From contig NW_003314327.1 of assembly GCF_000143415.4 (NCBI RefSeq), forward strand, positions 326,851 through 390,850: 64,000 bases of DNA, given 5' to 3'. Below the pieces are notes generated by a model. That model made no database searches. It was given only the letters and a program-made list of their open reading frames with translations, and was not told where the DNA came from. Positions 34,189 through 39,900 of this stretch are shown one piece after another. Source of the DNA: Selaginella moellendorffii. Lineage: Eukaryota > Plantae > Lycopodiophyta. Within the stretch, counting starts at the first letter, position 1; each line of letters opens with the position of its first letter. Position numbers and translations under genes: made by a program.

Positions 34189-37100
34189 CTAAGAGAAGGT
34201 GACTTGAGCCACTCCATTCGACGCGAGAGCTGCGACCATCTCTGGAACTGTGACGAAAACAATCACTGGATTTCCCGGAGACGCGGCCTGAGCAGCAGCA
34301 GCGGCAGCGATCTCGCCCGAGGACGAGGACGAGGACGAGGACGAAACCGGCACCACCATCACGCTCTCCAGCCCCAGCTGCGCCTTGATCAGCTCCAAGT
34401 TCTCCTCAAACACCCATCGCTCGTCGAATGGCAGCCGCAGCTCCAGCGCCTGCGGCCCGACCGACAGCGTCTCGTCCTTCTTGAACTTGACGAACGGCAT
34501 GCACTTCTTCTGGATCTGCTTGAAGTCCCCGGACTGTCCCACCGAGCTCTCGCGCAGCCGGGCCAAGATCTCCGCGTCCGGAGTGAACGTCTTGCTGCCG
34601 CTGTCGTAGCACGACTGGAGAATCTTCAGGGACTCCTCCTTCCAGCCTTCGTACTTCTCGGCTACGTAGATCAAGCCCGCCAGTGGAGCCGGCGCTGTTG
34701 GAGGCGCTGCTGCTTGTCCCTTCTTGGCCTTTTTCGAGCCGGCCAGGTGCTTCTGCAAGGCCTTCCGGAAGTCGGCAAGGATGGACTGGAAGAACTTGTT
34801 CGCTCTCTGAAGGGTCAAGTCGGGAGTTCCTGAGGCCGGCCAGCCTGCCGTCACTGCAAATCCTTCCTGGTGAAAGATCTCCGATCGGACATACTCGGCG
34901 TAGTGCGGACAAATTGGAGTCAGTAGCCGAGTCTGGACGTCCGCGAACCTGAAGATCAAGTCCCTGTTCATGCCCGAGGAGGAGCACGCCAGCCGGTACT
35001 CGTCCCTGGCGATCTGGAGATCGTAGAAACCCGACTTGAGCGCCTCACGGAACATCAGAGCTTTGTAGTTCTTCTCTGTCTGGTTGATAGCAATGTTGAT
35101 CTCGTTCTCAAACACGCGGTCCGCGAATGTAGTAGGGGGTCCCTTCCTCAGATCCTTTTCAGCAGCAATGAGCTCGTCGCTCATCCAGGCCATCTCCTTC
35201 GTCAGGCGCAGGATGGCGGAGTTTGCCGTCAGCTTGACGAAGTTTGCATCGTCGACCGAGTCTCCAGCGTCCGCCAGGCCGAACCTCGTTGCATCTGCCG
35301 AGAAGTCATTCACAGCGTCCCGAATGGTGAGGAAGTTCCCAGTCGACTTGGCCATCTTCTCCCCGTTCAGCAGCAGGAAACCATTGCACCGGAACGAACG
35401 AGGCCACCTCTCCTCCGGGAACATGGCGGTGTGATTGTAGATGCTAAAAGTCAGGTGGTTCTGGATGAGATCCTTCCCAGAGACGCGCAAGTCGAACGGA
35501 TACCAGTAATCAAACTCTTTCTTCATCCTCTGCAGAGTTTCAACCGGAATCTCGCTCTCTGGAAGAGGTCCCATGCCAAACACGAAGTCCCAGACTTTCC
35601 TCGTCATCTGCTCGGGCTTCACAGCATGATCACCTTTGCCATACAAGTCCCCCTCCTGTAAGATATGTGCCACCGTGTAGTACGCCATGTAGATGGTTGA
35701 ATCCGACAGAGACTCGATCAAAAAGTCCTGGTCCCAAGGAAACTTTGTGCCCAGCCCGAAAGAACGCGAGCAGGCCCATTGGTTCAGCCATCCAAGAGCG
35801 TGCTCGAACAAGCGCCTCGTTTCGTCGCTGTAGAGCTCCATCTGCGTCAGGCATTTTTCCGCCTGTGACTTCCATTCCTCCTCACCATACTGTAAGTACC
35901 ACTGGTCCGTCAAGGCCACCACACACTCGTCTCCTGACCTCGATATCACTTTCTTTTCGGGCTCGCTATAGATAATAGCTTGGCCTGACTCCACCAGCAA
36001 CTTCTTGATCAGCGGCTTCGCCTCCTGGACTTTCATTCCGGCATAGTCACCCACCAGCATCTTCCCGTCTGTGAACCCCTTCAAGTACGTCATCTTCTTT
36101 GCAGCTTCCAGATCATCCCGGTTGTTCTGGCTCTTGATCTTCATGCTGATGCAGACCGCTTCCGCCGACTTGTCCCCGAATTCCGGAATGTTGATGATGG
36201 GAATGACTTCGAAAGGTAGCACCCACTCGTCTCGGACGTTAAACTTCGCCCGCAGCCCAGGCTTCGACTTCAAATCCGAGAGTGCCATGTAGTCGTCGGG
36301 AGAGTCGCTTGGCACACTCGTCACAACTCCAGTACCTTTGTCCGTCTTGATGGTCAGCATCGGCAGCACGTAAACCACTGGATTCTTTGCAAGCGGAGAA
36401 ACCACCGCCAAACCGATCAAGTCCTGTCCCTTGAGTTCCACCAGGCACGTCGGTTGCTGCGGAACCCGTGACAAGTTCTGATAAGCCATGTTCAAGGCAG
36501 CCCGAGCCGTCACCACGAAAACTTCCGTCTCGCTGACTTCATAAGCACCGTAGTCACCGTCTGCCAGAACCCATGCATTTGTTTGGCCATACATGGTCTC
36601 CGGCCTCAAGGTGGCAGCTGCCAAGAAGACCTTCTTCCCTTCCAAAGCCTTGAGTTTCCCTGTGAAAGGAGGCTGGACCTCCATTTTGATAAGGACGTAC
36701 TCTTGAGGAGCCACACCCTCACCGGAAGCTCGATCGTGGTCGGCACAAGGCTGCCTGTCCAGAGGAGAATAGATGGCATACCGCAAATCCTTGCCCACCT
36801 TCTTCTTCTCACGCAAGTGCTCAAACTGCCACCTTACGAAAGAGTCGTAGTAAGGATTCGCCTCTGTGGTGATGAAAGAGCGTCTCCAGTCACAGCTCAG
36901 GCCGAAGAACTTCAAGTCGTTCTTGGCGATGGGCGGAAAATACTCCAGCCAGTAGAGTGGATCCCGGAACTTGGCAATCTCATCGTCCTCCAGACCCAAA
37001 GACCTCATGATCGTCCACTGATACTTGGAAGCACCGGACTTCGCCACAGCCTTGCTTTTCTTTGCTTTGAACTTCACCTCCACTGGAACCTCTTGAGTGG

Positions 37101-37527
37101 CCTCTTCTTTGTTCGCAACTGGAGCTGGAGCTTCTGCTGGAGCGTCGTCCGTCACCTCTGTAGGAAACACTGGAGGACACCCAAATTCTTCGCTCTCGCG
37201 GACCAGCTTATCGGCACAAGCCTTGATCGGCATCCCTGTGCAGTGAAATCCCATTGGCAGCAGCACCTTCGTGCCACAAAGCCTCTGGAACGCCGCGGAG
37301 AACTCTAGCTTGGAGAGCGAGAACGCGTGGCCCAAGTGAAGCGCCCCATTCATGTAGGGGTATGGAAAATTCCCGAAATATTTCTCACCGGGCTTGGGCG
37401 GCTCGTCGCTCGCATCGACCTCGAAGATCTTGGCGTCCTCCCATCGCTTCTGGATAATCTTCTCGATACCCAGCAGCTTGTCACGCCGCTCGGTGCTCAT
37501 CTTCTTCTCGGCGCCATCGCTGGCCAT
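34189..37527 (-). CDS. LeuRS: Cytosolic-type leucyl-tRNA synthetase; CDS uninterrupted from the ATG at 37527
   Basis: FPYPYMNGALHLGH (HIGH), ATLRPET, KGTGVVTSVPSDSPDD editing domain, SGKDLIQNHL, KMAKS (KMSKS). Confidence 0.97.
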   Translation of the reverse strand: MASDGAEKKMSTERRDKLLGIEKIIQKRWEDAKIFEVDASDEPPKPGEKYFGNFPYPYMNGALHLGHAFSLSKLEFSAAFQRLCGTKVLLPMGFHCTGMPIKACADKLVRESEEFGCPPVFPTEVTDDAPAEAPAPVANKEEATQEVPVEVKFKAKKSKAVAKSGASKYQWTIMRSLGLEDDEIAKFRDPLYWLEYFPPIAKNDLKFFGLSCDWRRSFITTEANPYYDSFVRWQFEHLREKKKVGKDLRYAIYSPLDRQPCADHDRASGEGVAPQEYVLIKMEVQPPFTGKLKALEGKKVFLAAATLRPETMYGQTNAWVLADGDYGAYEVSETEVFVVTARAALNMAYQNLSRVPQQPTCLVELKGQDLIGLAVVSPLAKNPVVYVLPMLTIKTDKGTGVVTSVPSDSPDDYMALSDLKSKPGLRAKFNVRDEWVLPFEVIPIINIPEFGDKSAEAVCISMKIKSQNNRDDLEAAKKMTYLKGFTDGKMLVGDYAGMKVQEAKPLIKKLLVESGQAIIYSEPEKKVISRSGDECVVALTDQWYLQYGEEEWKSQAEKCLTQMELYSDETRRLFEHALGWLNQWACSRSFGLGTKFPWDQDFLIESLSDSTIYMAYYTVAHILQEGDLYGKGDHAVKPEQMTRKVWDFVFGMGPLPESEIPVETLQRMKKEFDYWYPFDLRVSGKDLIQNHLTFSIYNHTAMFPEERWPRSFRCNGFLLLNGEKMAKSTGNFLTIRDAVNDFSADATRFGLADAGDSVDDANFVKLTANSAILRLTKEMAWMSDELIAAEKDLRKGPPTTFADRVFENEINIAINQTEKNYKALMFREALKSGFYDLQIARDEYRLACSSSGMNRDLIFRFADVQTRLLTPICPHYAEYVRSEIFHQEGFAVTAGWPASGTPDLTLQRANKFFQSILADFRKALQKHLAGSKKAKKGQAAAPPTAPAPLAGLIYVAEKYEGWKEESLKILQSCYDSGSKTFTPDAEILARLRESSVGQSGDFKQIQKKCMPFVKFKKDETLSVGPQALELRLPFDERWVFEENLELIKAQLGLESVMVVPVSSSSSSSSSGEIAAAAAAQAASPGNPVIVFVTVPEMVAALASNGVAQVTFS

Positions 37528-37528
37528 C

Positions 37529-37596
37529 CTGGATCGATGAACAGAGAAAATGCGACTTAAACCACGGAGGATCTCTCGGCGAGCAAGAAAACTCAC
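37529..37596 (-). other. 68-nt intron just upstream of the LeuRS ATG
   Basis: GTGAGT donor ... ttttctctgttcatcgatccAG acceptor, then G ATG. Confidence 0.8.
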
Positions 37597-37799
37597 GTCG
37601 CGATGCAGCGAAGGATGCGACGTAGAGAGCCTCCCGTGTTGCCGCTACAGCAGCGCCGCCGCCGCCGCCGCCGCGCAGTGAAGCTCTCGTTCTGGTAAAC
37701 CCTAATCCTCACTGGCAAGGCACCTACGATGGTCAAGGGTTCCATACCTATCTATCTTGAGCAAGGCGAGTCGCTTTCTTAATGGCTAAGCAATCTCTG

Positions 37800-37975
37800 G
37801 ACGTGGGTAACGTATTTTTTCATGCGTTTTGTTACACAGTTCTTTTGCGGAGGCGACATGGAACTCCTGCAAAGGTAGACTTATATTTTTCTTTTGTGCA
37901 GTCATTTCTACCTTGAGACTGATTTGTGCTATCATCCATCGTTGGTGCCGTGGTTCTCGCAAGAAAATTCGGGCA
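37800..37975 (+). pseudogene. Heavily deleted remnant of the 3' part of SNU114
   Basis: Collinear blocks tacacagttctt.gcggaggcga, ggaactcctgca, ttttgtgcag.catttctacc, gagactgatttg.gctatca and ccgtggttctc match about 31070-31430. Confidence 0.8.
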
Positions 37976-38038
37976 TCTTATTTAAATCCCTTAGTCTCAT
38001 GCTGCTTGGGGGTGCTACTAGACCATGGAAACAGTATA

Positions 38039-38066
38039 TGAATGAATGAATGAATGAATGAATGAA
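38039..38066. repeat. (TGAA)n microsatellite
   Basis: tgaatgaatgaa..., seen directly. Confidence 0.9.
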
Positions 38067-38069
38067 AGC

Positions 38070-39900
38070 TCAATCAACATGTTACATGGGAGTTGGACTC
38101 CATACTAATTATTAAGAAAATTGATATGAAGTGGAAGCCACTTTTTATTCAATAATTATATATCAAAACTTTTGTGATAGTTTCAAACTTGCATTTGACT
38201 ATTGATTTTAAATTATACTCTACAATAAACTCTTGGAGCTGGATCTTCTTAACTAATTATATAACTTTCTCTGAAGGAAAGTTGGACTATTAAAATAAAT
38301 TGCTATGTGTTGCATATAGTAACACTTGGTTTGTTTAATAATAGTGTTATTCTTACTTATTAATTCAATTGGTTAAATAAAGTTTATAATTAGAAGCATG
38401 TTTGTAATTTATAAACACAAAATTATTTTTATTGCATATCAACCATTAAATGATGGAATAAAAAATAATATACTAGAAAGGGTTTAATTTATAAATTATA
38501 AATATAATATTAATCTAAATGAATAACAACCTTTAGATGGTAAAATATTCTAGAATATTCAAGCATATTCTAGGTATATTCACTACCATACAGGTTTGCT
38601 TAAGCAAACCAAAAATACCAAGTTATTCAACCCTAAACCAAATAAACTTAAAAACCTTTAAATGTACTATAATAGTAATTACTACTATGGTAAATTTAAA
38701 GAAGGGTACATCAGAGTTGGTTTTTTTTTCTAAGAAATTTATTTTAGAAAAAAACCCTTAACTTATGAGGGAGAAGTATTAGCCAAGAGTAACTAGTTAT
38801 ACAATTGTTTACATAAATGACTTTTTATATTATAATTGAGATATACTTAATTATAATATAAAAAGTCATTTATGTAAAAAATTGTATACTTGGACTTTTA
38901 AGGATGTTATGGATCACTAATTAAGTAGCTTTAGGAGGTCTTTGTTCTAAAAAATAATTTGCTGCACATTATATATAGCAACACTTGATTTTCTTAATAC
39001 TGTTTAGTATTATGTTTTGGAACTAAATAAACTAGAATCTAAAAGGTATAAAATGAAAATCTACTATTGTTCTCTAGGAATTCAATTGATCAAATAGAAG
39101 TTTATAATTTATAAACAATAAACTAAAATATAATAAAAAGTGTTTTAGAAAGTTTATAAACTATTAACATGTTTATAAATTATAAATACAAGATTAATCT
39201 TAAGAATAAACTAAAATATACTACAAAATTGTTTTGGAACGTTCGTGCAATCCACAGTTGCGGGATTGCTCAGGGGGATGTATAAATATAAAGCATATCC
39301 CAGAATCCAAACATATTCATGATTTGATTTAAGCAAACCAATAATTTTTACATTTTCCACAAACATATTTGATATCTTCTTTTTCTTTTGACAACCAAAA
39401 AGTGTCTCTTTGATTGAAGTAGACTTCTAGTTTCTATTGCAAACATTTGACCTCTTCTACTTTATATTTCTAATTGAGAGTAGAGAGTTTGATGTTATAG
39501 ATTCTTCTAATTCTTGTTGAGGTCTAGACCTTTGTCATTCACTATCCAAAACTTATCTGCTTTTGACGATCTAAACTAATAAATGACTTTGCACATTAAC
39601 TTATAAGCCAACTCTAAGCCTACTTTTAATAACTCAGAATTTCTATGCAAATGTTCACAAGATAAACCATATAGCATCAATAACACAAGAAAATGGAAGA
39701 TTTTCTTGTTTGTGTAGCATGGCCACTTCAGGTGAACATTAAAACAGTTTACCTTAGAATACTGTTCAAGATAGAAGAATAACATGTAAAAAATAAGAAC
39801 TAAATAATAACAATATCTTCCTAACTAATAGGAAATCCTAGAATGTACCTGAAGATTCTATAAAGCAAACCATATTGAAATGTTTGGACAGAGAAGTCGA
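38070..39900. mobile_element. AT-rich, CpG-depleted island with an internal direct repeat and a hairpin; probable non-autonomous transposon remnant
   Basis: 38298-38425 resembles 38955-39200; long palindrome at 38798-38888; no coding motifs. Confidence 0.45.
38798..38888. repeat. Inverted repeat: 40-bp arms, 1 mismatch, 11-nt loop
   Basis: tatacaattgtttacataaatgactttttatattataatt-gagatatactt-aattataatataaaaagtcatttatgtaaaaaattgtata. Confidence 0.9.

What the first reader, a model, noticed from the sequence alone, without database searches (positions are those of the whole stretch)
37525..37745. Hidden spliced N-terminal extension on cytosolic LeuRS: candidate mitochondrial retargeting
Seen: removing the 68-nt intron 37529-37596 puts the upstream exon in frame with the LeuRS ATG, with no stop back to an ATG at 37745. 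The extension reads MEPLTIVGALPVRIRVYQNESFTARRRRRRRCCSGNTGGSLRRILRCIAT-MASDG. Its distal part is Arg-rich, has no acidic residues and looks like a presequence. An in-frame ACG in strong context (AAC-ACG-G, 37637) would give (M)GGSLRRILRCIAT. Established: the S. moellendorffii mitochondrial genome lacks tRNA genes, so cytosolic tRNAs must be imported, and several plant cytosolic-type aaRS are shared with mitochondria through alternative starts. Inference: one gene makes cytosolic and mitochondrial LeuRS via an alternative TSS, a non-AUG start or intron retention (retention shifts the frame). The ORF track misses this and starts at the GTG of the splice donor.
Basis: partly seen in the sequence, partly recalled or inferred. 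Interest (0 to 1): 0.75.

Follow-up and report, generated by a model that had tools for sequence, protein, structure and literature searches.

The report
Spikemoss LeuRS with spliced upstream leader
A spikemoss gene for the enzyme that loads leucine onto tRNA has a small spliced upstream exon that adds a 50-residue arginine-rich leader in frame; the public annotation already includes it, and it may send part of the enzyme into mitochondria that lack tRNA genes, but that is untested.

Summary
On the minus strand a 68-nt GT..AG intron (37596-37529) lies 1 nt before the LeuRS ATG (37527). Assembled RNA contigs from four runs in four studies show it spliced out. Removing it puts a 50-codon exon-1 ORF (ATG 37745, context GGTATGG) in frame with LeuRS. 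One contig runs 57 nt beyond that ATG.

It is not hidden. RefSeq XP_002985270.2 (Selaginella moellendorffii, "leucine--tRNA ligase, cytoplasmic", 1162 aa) is exactly this model. Two of the three other genomic copies carry the same extension. The fourth has a 14-nt deletion that breaks the frame.

Mitochondrial targeting is plausible but unproven.
- For: net charge +10; a strongly amphipathic SLRRILRCIAT segment with Tom20-type and -3R-type motifs; liverwort LeuRS genes with a presequence-like exon 1 at the same boundary; Arabidopsis cytosolic-type LeuRS serves mitochondria.
- Against: substitution patterns do not reject neutrality; the Arg run comes from a (CGG)7 microsatellite; no other Selaginella species could be compared; no start-site or protein data.
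- Intron retention and the ACG start have no support.

If real, this is a new member of a known kind. Interest is moderate to low.

The parts
37597..37802 (-). Exon 1 (5' leader exon) as far as RNA contigs show it. The true transcription start is not mapped and lies at or upstream of about 37802 in run X1.
   Evidence: spliced contig X1 record 3 spans 37187-37527 and 37596-37802. Other runs end at 37748, 37745 and 37739.
37743..37745 (-). Upstream in-frame AUG, context GGT ATG G (purine at -3, G at +4). It is the first AUG within the leader seen in the contig.
   Evidence: It is the start of RefSeq model XP_002985270.2.
37597..37745 (-). Coding part of exon 1: 49 codons plus the first two bases of codon 50. 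The N-terminal extension has net charge +10, 12 Arg and 2 Glu.
37653..37673 (-). Trinucleotide microsatellite, (CGG)6 plus CGC, encoding the run of seven Arg.
   Evidence: period 3, 7 copies, 37654-37674.
37635..37637 (-). It is kept in all four genomic copies but has no evidence of use.
37597..37628 (-). Distal amphipathic segment SLRRILRCIAT (residues 40-50). It has the highest hydrophobic moment in the leader, contains LRRIL (phi-x-x-phi-phi), and R-C-I|A-T fits a -3R cleavage pattern. It is identical in all four copies.
37529..37596 (-). 68-nt GT..AG intron (GTGAGT...pyrimidine tract...CAG). It is the only intron of the gene.
   Evidence: (joint in 4 of 4 runs); it is 65 nt in the paralogous locus.
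37525..37527 (-). Canonical LeuRS AUG, context ACG ATG GCC. It aligns with the N-termini of other plant cytosolic LeuRS.
34189..37527 (-). Intron-less LeuRS coding sequence: 1112 codons plus the stop at 34189-34191. It is a eukaryotic cytosolic-type class Ia enzyme.
   Evidence: (tRNA-synt_1, Anticodon_1, RBD_LARS1).

Best explanation
This is one of four genomic copies (two loci, two haplotypes each) of the eukaryotic cytosolic-type leucyl-tRNA synthetase of Selaginella moellendorffii.

Shown: the mRNA has a 5' exon joined to an otherwise intron-less coding body by removal of a 68-nt intron that ends 1 nt before the canonical AUG. In the spliced mRNA an upstream AUG (37745) in good context opens a 50-codon stop-free extension in frame with the enzyme.

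Inferred: ribosomes start at this AUG on a substantial share of transcripts and make a 1162-residue precursor. Its Arg-rich leader, above all the amphipathic SLRRILRCIAT segment next to the mature N-terminus, acts as a mitochondrial (possibly dual-organelle) import signal. This would supply tRNA-gene-less mitochondria with the enzyme that recognises imported cytosolic tRNA-Leu.

Also inferred: the shorter cytosolic enzyme comes from the canonical AUG, by leaky scanning, by transcripts that start at or just upstream of 37745, or by incomplete import.
For: - Splicing and frame come from the sequence and from RNA contigs of 4 runs in 4 studies.
- The upstream AUG lies inside the transcript. The X1 contig reaches 37802, with no other AUG in between.
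- Exon-1 contig depth is similar to that of the coding contigs (120 vs 127-176; 22.2 vs 22.1-26.4).
- AUG context is G at -3 and G at +4.
- RefSeq models for three of four copies include the extension.
- The frame stays open across two loci that differ by dS about 0.15.
- Pooled substitutions in in-frame alleles are 6 synonymous to 6 non-synonymous, where neutrality expects 72% non-synonymous (p=0.085).
- The last 51 nt show only one change, and it is synonymous.
- Leader features: net charge +10, no acidic residue after position 20, hydrophobic moment 0.86 for residues 40-50, an LRRIL motif and an R-C-I|A-T motif.
- Parallel: Marchantia paleacea and Riccia fluitans LeuRS genes have an exon 1 that encodes a 26-residue presequence-like extension and ends right at the canonical Met, with intron 1 at the same boundary.
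- There is a weak local similarity, GGSLRRILR to GGHLKSFLK and GTVRRFL (joint shuffle p=0.027).
- 37 of 172 full-length plant cytosolic-type LeuRS models carry extensions of 20 or more residues, many of them presequence-like.
- Need: S. moellendorffii mtDNA has no tRNA genes (PMC5654404).
- Precedent: the Arabidopsis cytosolic-type LeuRS AT1G09620 is the mitochondrial LeuRS (PMC13308715).
Against: - No protein, ribosome or start-site data exist. Contigs cannot show transcript starts.
- Exon-1 omega is 0.3-0.56 on 10-11 changes and is not distinguishable from 1. Overall exon-1 divergence (6.7%) equals the local neutral level: about 9% in the intron and dS 0.068 in the first 150 codons.
- Copy D has a 14-nt deletion that breaks the frame. 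Its upstream AUGs then open an out-of-frame ORF across the main AUG, so D may simply be an impaired allele.
- Frame maintenance could be selected only to avoid such an overlapping uORF.
- The Arg run is a (CGG)7 microsatellite.
- The leader has Glu at positions 2 and 20 and four Cys.
- The amphipathic score is reached by 18% of residue shuffles.
- The strong context of the first AUG makes it unclear how enough cytosolic enzyme would be made.
- Arabidopsis LeuRS enters mitochondria without a predictable presequence (PMC8067559), so an extension is not required.
- No other Selaginella species could be compared.
- No trained targeting predictor was available.
Confidence: 0.45

Rival explanations
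1. The extension is translated but has no targeting role. Exon 1 is in essence a 5' leader that happens to hold an AUG in frame. The extra 50 residues are tolerated on a functional cytosolic enzyme. The frame is kept only because an out-of-frame upstream AUG would create an overlapping uORF and cut LeuRS output.
For: - Substitution pattern is compatible with neutrality.
- The Arg run comes from a microsatellite typical of leaders.
- Copy D shows what an out-of-frame version does: a 62-66-codon ORF that ends 44 nt past the main AUG.
- Homology between the two loci starts only about 3 nt before the AUG, and the upstream sequence is unrelated.
- No relatives of the peptide were found in 1.84 billion representatives, apart from repeat artefacts.
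- No Pfam family matches the peptide.
Against: - The distal third is unchanged in four copies.
- The leader combines high positive charge with a strongly amphipathic segment. Such N-termini often confer import (general knowledge, not tested here).
- Liverwort genes have a presequence-like exon at the same boundary.
Confidence: 0.25
2. The extension is not translated to any meaningful degree. Most transcripts start at or just upstream of 37745, or scanning bypasses that AUG, so LeuRS starts at 37527. The RefSeq extension would then be a longest-ORF artefact.
For: - Three of four contigs end within 6 nt of the AUG (37748, 37745, 37739). If those ends reflect starts, the AUG would be absent or too close to the cap.
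- The original genome annotation and UniProt entries start at the canonical Met or later (P0121, P0124, P0125, P0126).
- The canonical AUG has the better context (A at -3, GCC after it).
Against: - The X1 contig runs 57 nt past the AUG at the same depth.
- Contig ends in k-mer assemblies also arise from allele or paralogue forks and from falling coverage, so they are not starts.
- The upstream AUG has a purine at -3 and G at +4.
Confidence: 0.2
3. The polybasic leader serves another purpose. It could be an appended non-specific tRNA-binding helper or a nuclear or nucleolar signal, as basic N-terminal appendages do on other eukaryotic aaRSs.
For: - Seven consecutive Arg and 12 Arg in 50 residues.
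- N-terminal appendages that combine a signal with a tRNA-binding part are described for yeast ValRS (introduction of PMC8067559).
Against: - The Arg run is the least conserved kind of sequence, a microsatellite. One Arg is replaced by Leu in locus C/D, and the run is partly deleted in copy D.
- There is no homology to known appended domains.
Confidence: 0.07

Closest known systems
Arabidopsis cytosolic-type LeuRS AT1G09620 (classified cyto-mito; the bacterial-type AT4G04350 is chloroplast-only)
   Same: It is the same enzyme family (64-67% identity to plant cytosolic LeuRS). One eukaryote-type gene serves cytosol and mitochondria, because mitochondrial tRNA-Leu is imported (PMC13308715).
   Different: The Arabidopsis enzyme is reported to lack a predictable presequence and to use a tRNA-dependent TIM22-type route (PMC8067559). 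Here a 50-residue N-terminal extension is encoded by a separate exon. Localisation in Selaginella is untested.
Arabidopsis ValRS, ThrRS and GlyRS made from two in-frame AUGs (mitochondrial long form, cytosolic short form)
   Same: Two in-frame AUGs sit on one mRNA. The upstream extensions are 33-44 residues there and 50 here, and the downstream Met is the cytosolic start (PMC8770321).
   Different: [quoted passage not shown] The first AUG here is in a good context, which does not favour leaky scanning. An intron separates the extension from the body.
Sileneae cytosolic aaRSs retargeted to mitochondria after mt-tRNA gene loss
   Same: The evolutionary logic is the same: loss of mitochondrial tRNA genes is followed by N-terminal extensions on cytosolic aaRSs, sometimes through alternative transcription starts (PMC10375062).
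   Different: Those gains are recent and are supported by Iso-Seq isoforms, predictors and localisation assays. LeuRS was not among them, because tRNA-Leu was lost before angiosperms arose (PMC13308715).
Liverwort cytosolic-type LeuRS genes (Marchantia paleacea Mapa_003870, Riccia fluitans R1flu_018220)
   Same: Exon 1 encodes a short basic presequence-like extension. Intron 1 sits at the junction with the canonical Met. There is weak motif resemblance around G-x-L/V-R/K-R/S-F/I-L.
   Different: The liverwort extension is 26 residues, and the canonical Met is the last codon of exon 1 rather than the first full codon of exon 2. The liverwort genes span 9-11 kb with many introns, whereas the Selaginella body is intron-less. 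Function is untested there as well.

Membership tests
Eukaryotic cytosolic-type class Ia leucyl-tRNA synthetase | Class I catalytic domain, anticodon-binding domain and LARS1-type C-terminal domain | tested here: met
   PF00133 (2.6e-26), PF08264 (1.4e-10) and PF24810 RBD_LARS1 (9.9e-09), all above their curated cut-offs.
Eukaryotic cytosolic-type class Ia leucyl-tRNA synthetase | HIGH and KMSKS signature motifs present | tested here: met
   Read directly from the translation...NGALHLGHAF... and ...GEKMAKSTGNF....
Eukaryotic cytosolic-type class Ia leucyl-tRNA synthetase | Full-length similarity to plant proteins named cytoplasmic LeuRS | tested here: met
   64-67% identity over about 1090 residues to plant 'leucine--tRNA ligase, cytoplasmic' entries. 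The match to RefSeq XP_002985270.2 residues 51-1162 is 100%.
Dual cytosol/mitochondrion aaRS made from two in-frame starts | Two in-frame initiation codons with no stop between them on the mature mRNA | tested here: met
Dual cytosol/mitochondrion aaRS made from two in-frame starts | Both proteoforms are produced, by leaky scanning or alternative transcription starts | tested here: inconclusive
   Only contigs were available and they cannot show starts. The first AUG is in a good context, which does not favour leaky scanning.
Dual cytosol/mitochondrion aaRS made from two in-frame starts | The long form is imported and the enzyme is present in mitochondria | not testable with these tools
   This needs GFP fusions, import assays or organelle proteomics.
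Dual cytosol/mitochondrion aaRS made from two in-frame starts | The extension is conserved as coding sequence in relatives | tested here: inconclusive
   The frame is kept in 3 of 4 copies within the species and broken by a 14-nt deletion in the fourth. Omega is 0.3-0.56 and not significant. No other Selaginella species was found.
Cleavable mitochondrial presequence | Net positive charge, few acidic residues, amphipathic helix | tested here: met
   net charge +10 and 2 acidic residues, both in the first 20. Hydrophobic moment is 0.86 for residues 40-50, a value that 18% of residue shuffles also reach.
Cleavable mitochondrial presequence | Receptor motif (phi-x-x-phi-phi) and an Arg at -2 or -3 from a cleavage site | tested here: met
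   and direct reading: LRRIL, and R-C-I|A-T two residues before the canonical Met. These are short motifs, so specificity is low.
Cleavable mitochondrial presequence | Positive call by a trained predictor (TargetP, MitoFates) and experimental import | not tested
   No such predictor is among the tools.

The most novel reading that the evidence does not exclude
Exon 1 is the Selaginella version of an ancient land-plant LeuRS presequence exon, shared with liverworts. It was kept together with intron 1 while every other intron of the gene was lost. It directs the eukaryote-type LeuRS into mitochondria that have no tRNA genes, and perhaps also into plastids that import cytosolic tRNAs. This would make Selaginella a natural case of an organelle translation system running on cytosolic tRNA-Leu and its cytosolic synthetase.
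Probability: 0.2. Interest if true: 0.55.

Novelty: new member of a known kind. Interest (0 to 1): 0.35.

Why it matters
Selaginella moellendorffii is the land plant whose mitochondrial genome has lost every tRNA gene, and Selaginella plastids also import nuclear tRNAs. None of the papers I could search describes how the matching aminoacyl-tRNA synthetases reach these organelles. A presequence-bearing isoform of the cytosolic-type LeuRS would give one concrete, testable piece of that rewiring. Together with the liverwort parallel, it would suggest that a presequence exon on cytosolic-type LeuRS is old in land plants.

The gain is limited. The gene model is already public. Cytosolic-type LeuRS serving mitochondria is already the rule in angiosperms. 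The mechanism of two in-frame starts is textbook for plant aaRSs.

Tried and rejected
- Other Selaginella species. Three word-index protein searches found nothing closer than 67% identity outside S. moellendorffii (N-terminal 160 residues, full-length P0122, and P0122:1-250 to catch fragments). Frame conservation across species therefore stays untested.
- Exon shuffling from another gene's presequence. phmmer of the 50-residue peptide against 1.84 billion representatives gave four hits, all repeat or low-complexity artefacts. This was rejected for lack of evidence.
- Pfam on the peptide gave nothing. Rfam on 37300-38300 gave nothing.
- Leader RNA structure. The fold energy is no better than shuffles (z = -0.97). 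The ACG lies in the 3' arm of the CGG-repeat hairpin and a 6-bp stem starts 16 nt downstream. I did not count this as support for non-AUG initiation.
- Loose-end sequences of odd contigs were searched in the window and are absent.
- Exact look-up of the short-form protein failed. The reference I gave included the stop codon.
- Diphasiastrum gene structure is not on record, and no Cryptomeria DNA was served.
- I did not type or search my own joined exon-1 plus exon-2 protein. The exons were handled by reference. The database protein P0122, returned by a tool, served as the joined form.
- walked codons across the junction by index only, to locate stops. It built and searched no joined sequence.
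- Read laying was given 1,401 letters.

Full report
**What is in the sequence.** The gene is on the minus strand. A single ORF (34189..37596) encodes a cytosolic-type leucyl-tRNA synthetase. Its canonical ATG at 37527-37525 aligns with the N-termini of other plant cytosolic LeuRS. One base upstream of that ATG lies a CAG acceptor ending at 37529. A GTGAGT donor starts at 37596, which gives a 68-nt intron with a pyrimidine tract. Upstream of the donor, a 50-codon ORF runs from ATG 37745. The split codon AC|G puts it in frame with the LeuRS ATG. An in-frame TAG lies three codons upstream of 37745. Every coordinate in the finding checks out, including the ACG at 37637 and the GTG 'start' of the mechanical ORF.

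**Is the intron real?** I laid contigs of four public runs on 37000-38400. They come from four studies and carry three coded organism labels. The runs are recorded only as probable RNA. All four show one joint that skips exactly these 68 nt with GT..AG ends, and none has a contig across the intron. A form without the intron, present in every run, is what RNA gives.
- The spliced contigs extend 5' to 37802 (X1), 37748 (X5, then 216 unrelated letters), 37745 (X2) and 37739 (X15).
- In X1 the contig that carries exon 1 has mean depth 120, against 127-176 for the coding contigs. In X15 the figures are 22.2 against 22.1-26.4. Exon 1 is therefore in the bulk of the transcripts.
- Contigs cannot show transcript starts. 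What is established is that the upstream AUG lies within the mRNA in at least X1, with 57 nt of AUG-free leader before it.
- Its context, GGT ATG G, is good. The canonical one, ACG ATG GCC, is better.

**It is already annotated.** The closest database protein cluster is Selaginella moellendorffii 'leucine--tRNA ligase, cytoplasmic'. Member XP_002985270.2 (P0122, 1162 aa) equals the exon-1 peptide followed by the 1112-residue enzyme of this window at 100% identity. So the 'hidden' extension is the current RefSeq model. Older models (EFJ entries, UniProt) start at the canonical or a later Met.

**Four copies.** The genome assembly holds four copies.
- A is this window. B (L003, XP_002970079.2) has the same neighbours as A, with coding dS of 0.031, so A and B are two haplotypes of one locus.
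- C (L002, XP_002990283.2) and D (L001, XP_002961420.1) share other neighbours, with dS of 0.018, so they are haplotypes of a second locus.
- The two loci differ by dS about 0.15 and omega about 0.08 in the enzyme.
- The alignment of the 5' regions shows that homology between the loci begins about 3 nt upstream of ATG 37745. Further upstream the sequences are unrelated.
- A, B and C keep the 50 codons with no length change. C has lost the ATG (it reads ATC) but starts six codons further upstream in its own leader.
- D has a 14-nt deletion in the CGG-repeat part, so its upstream AUGs are out of frame. They open a 62-66-codon ORF that overlaps the main AUG and stops 44 nt beyond it. This should depress LeuRS translation from D.
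- D therefore reads as an impaired allele as easily as it reads as proof that the leader is non-coding.

**Selection.**
- Exon 1, A against C: 4 synonymous and 6 non-synonymous changes (dS 0.10, dN 0.057, omega 0.56). B against C gives omega 0.30.
- Pooling all changes among in-frame alleles gives 6:6, against a neutral expectation of 72% non-synonymous (p = 0.085).
- Total exon-1 divergence (6.7%) matches the local neutral level. The intron differs by about 9% plus two indels, and dS is 0.068 in the first 150 codons.
- The last 51 nt carry one synonymous change against nine in the first 99 nt (Fisher p = 0.17).
- Overall there is a hint of constraint, strongest on the distal third, but nothing significant.

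**Chance.** Dinucleotide shuffles of the leader give an AUG-initiated open in-frame extension of 50 or more codons in 1.7% of trials. This is rare for one gene, yet expected for some genes in a genome.

**Does it look like a presequence?**
- Net charge is +10, with 12 Arg and two Glu (positions 2 and 20).
- The profile of hydrophobic moment is flat until residue 35 and then rises to 0.86 for SLRRILRCIAT. That segment contains a phi-x-x-phi-phi motif (LRRIL) and an Arg three residues before a possible I|A cleavage.
- 18% of residue shuffles reach the same moment, so this is compatible with a presequence but not diagnostic.
- The Arg run is a perfect trinucleotide microsatellite.
- No trained predictor was available.

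**Comparative lead.**
- Among 172 full-length plant cytosolic-type LeuRS proteins fetched here, 37 carry extensions of 20 or more residues before the canonical start. Many lack acidic residues and are rich in Ser, Arg, Leu and Phe. Seed plants show a recurrent R-x-F-C/S-Q-F motif a few residues before the Met.
- In two liverworts, Marchantia paleacea and Riccia fluitans, exon 1 encodes a 26-residue basic extension and ends exactly at the canonical Met, followed by intron 1.
- In Selaginella the only intron sits at the same junction, four bases away relative to the Met.
- The liverwort genes span 9-11 kb, while the Selaginella coding body has no intron. This fits reverse-transcript-mediated intron loss that spared the 5'-most intron. 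It would make exon 1 the ancestral first exon rather than a recruited one. This step is inference.
- A local alignment of GGSLRRILR with GGHLKSFLK and GTVRRFL is only suggestive (joint shuffle p = 0.027).

**Literature.**
- S. moellendorffii mtDNA lacks all tRNA genes (PMC5654404).
- Selaginella plastids import nuclear tRNAs (PMC11573648). That paper does not deal with synthetases.
- In Arabidopsis the cytosolic-type LeuRS AT1G09620 is the cytosol-plus-mitochondrion enzyme, and the bacterial-type one is chloroplast-only (PMC13308715). It is reported to lack a predictable presequence (PMC8067559).
- ValRS, ThrRS and GlyRS use two in-frame AUGs (PMC8770321).
- Sileneae gained extensions on cytosolic aaRSs after mt-tRNA loss, sometimes through alternative starts (PMC10375062).
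- I found no paper on Selaginella aaRS targeting.

**Verdict.** The reading 'one gene, cytosolic and organellar LeuRS' is the best single explanation at about 45%. Shown: the intron, the frame, the AUG within the mRNA, and the open frame in three of four copies. Inferred: translation from 37745, import, and the origin of the short form. The rivals are a tolerated, functionless in-frame leader (about 25%), little or no translation of the leader (about 20%), and another role for the basic tail (about 7%). Intron retention and the ACG start are unsupported. If the targeting is real, this is a new member of a known kind.

Noticed in passing
window 37431-37519 (contigs X2 record 14 and X5 record 18): An expressed, more diverged partial copy of the LeuRS 5' end. 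It has 6 differences in 89 nt and unrelated sequence on both sides. Its exon-1-like part joins 10 nt differently (GATGGCCAGC is missing), which puts the exon-1 frame out of register with LeuRS. In X5 its depth is similar to that of the main transcript. It is not in this window and matches none of the four genomic copies aligned.
   Followed up: partly
window about 37748 and upstream, compared with L002 and L001 (alignment A2): Homology between the two paralogous LeuRS loci starts about 3 nt upstream of the extension's ATG. The promoters and 5' leaders are unrelated. Locus C/D supplies its own two in-frame ATGs six and two codons further upstream. The X5 contig joins a C/D-type leader to an exon 1 that still has the ATG.
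   Followed up: partly
L001:2850-3001 (copy D, GL377566.1): A 14-nt deletion in the CGG-repeat part of exon 1 turns the upstream AUGs into a 62-66-codon out-of-frame ORF that overlaps the LeuRS start. This is probably a translationally weakened haplotype.
   Followed up: yes
window 34189-37527, compared with L004 and L005: The 3.3-kb LeuRS coding body has no intron in any of the four Selaginella copies, whereas the liverwort orthologues span 9-11 kb. Only the 5'-most intron survives. This is the pattern expected from cDNA-mediated intron loss.
   Followed up: partly
proteins P0017, P0081, P0030, P0024, P0062, P0104, P0042, P0160, P0164, P0116 and others: About a fifth of plant cytosolic-type LeuRS models (37 of 172) carry N-terminal extensions. 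Many look like mitochondrial presequences. Seed plants share an R-x-F-C/S-Q-F motif just before the canonical Met. The Arabidopsis enzyme is described as lacking a presequence (PMC8067559).
   Followed up: partly
window 37800-38030: Low-depth contigs in run X1 (8-11 against 120) lie upstream of the main transcript end. They carry the 7-nt insertion of haplotype B. This could be a minor upstream start, read-through or another transcript. A 14-codon upstream ORF (ATG 37823) would be included in such transcripts.
   Followed up: no
window 38038-38066 and 37513-37532: There is a perfect (ATGA)7 microsatellite upstream of the gene. There is also a 10-nt near-tandem duplication across the LeuRS start (GATGGCCAGC / GATGGCGCC), which creates a second, out-of-frame ATG 10 nt after the first.
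   Followed up: no
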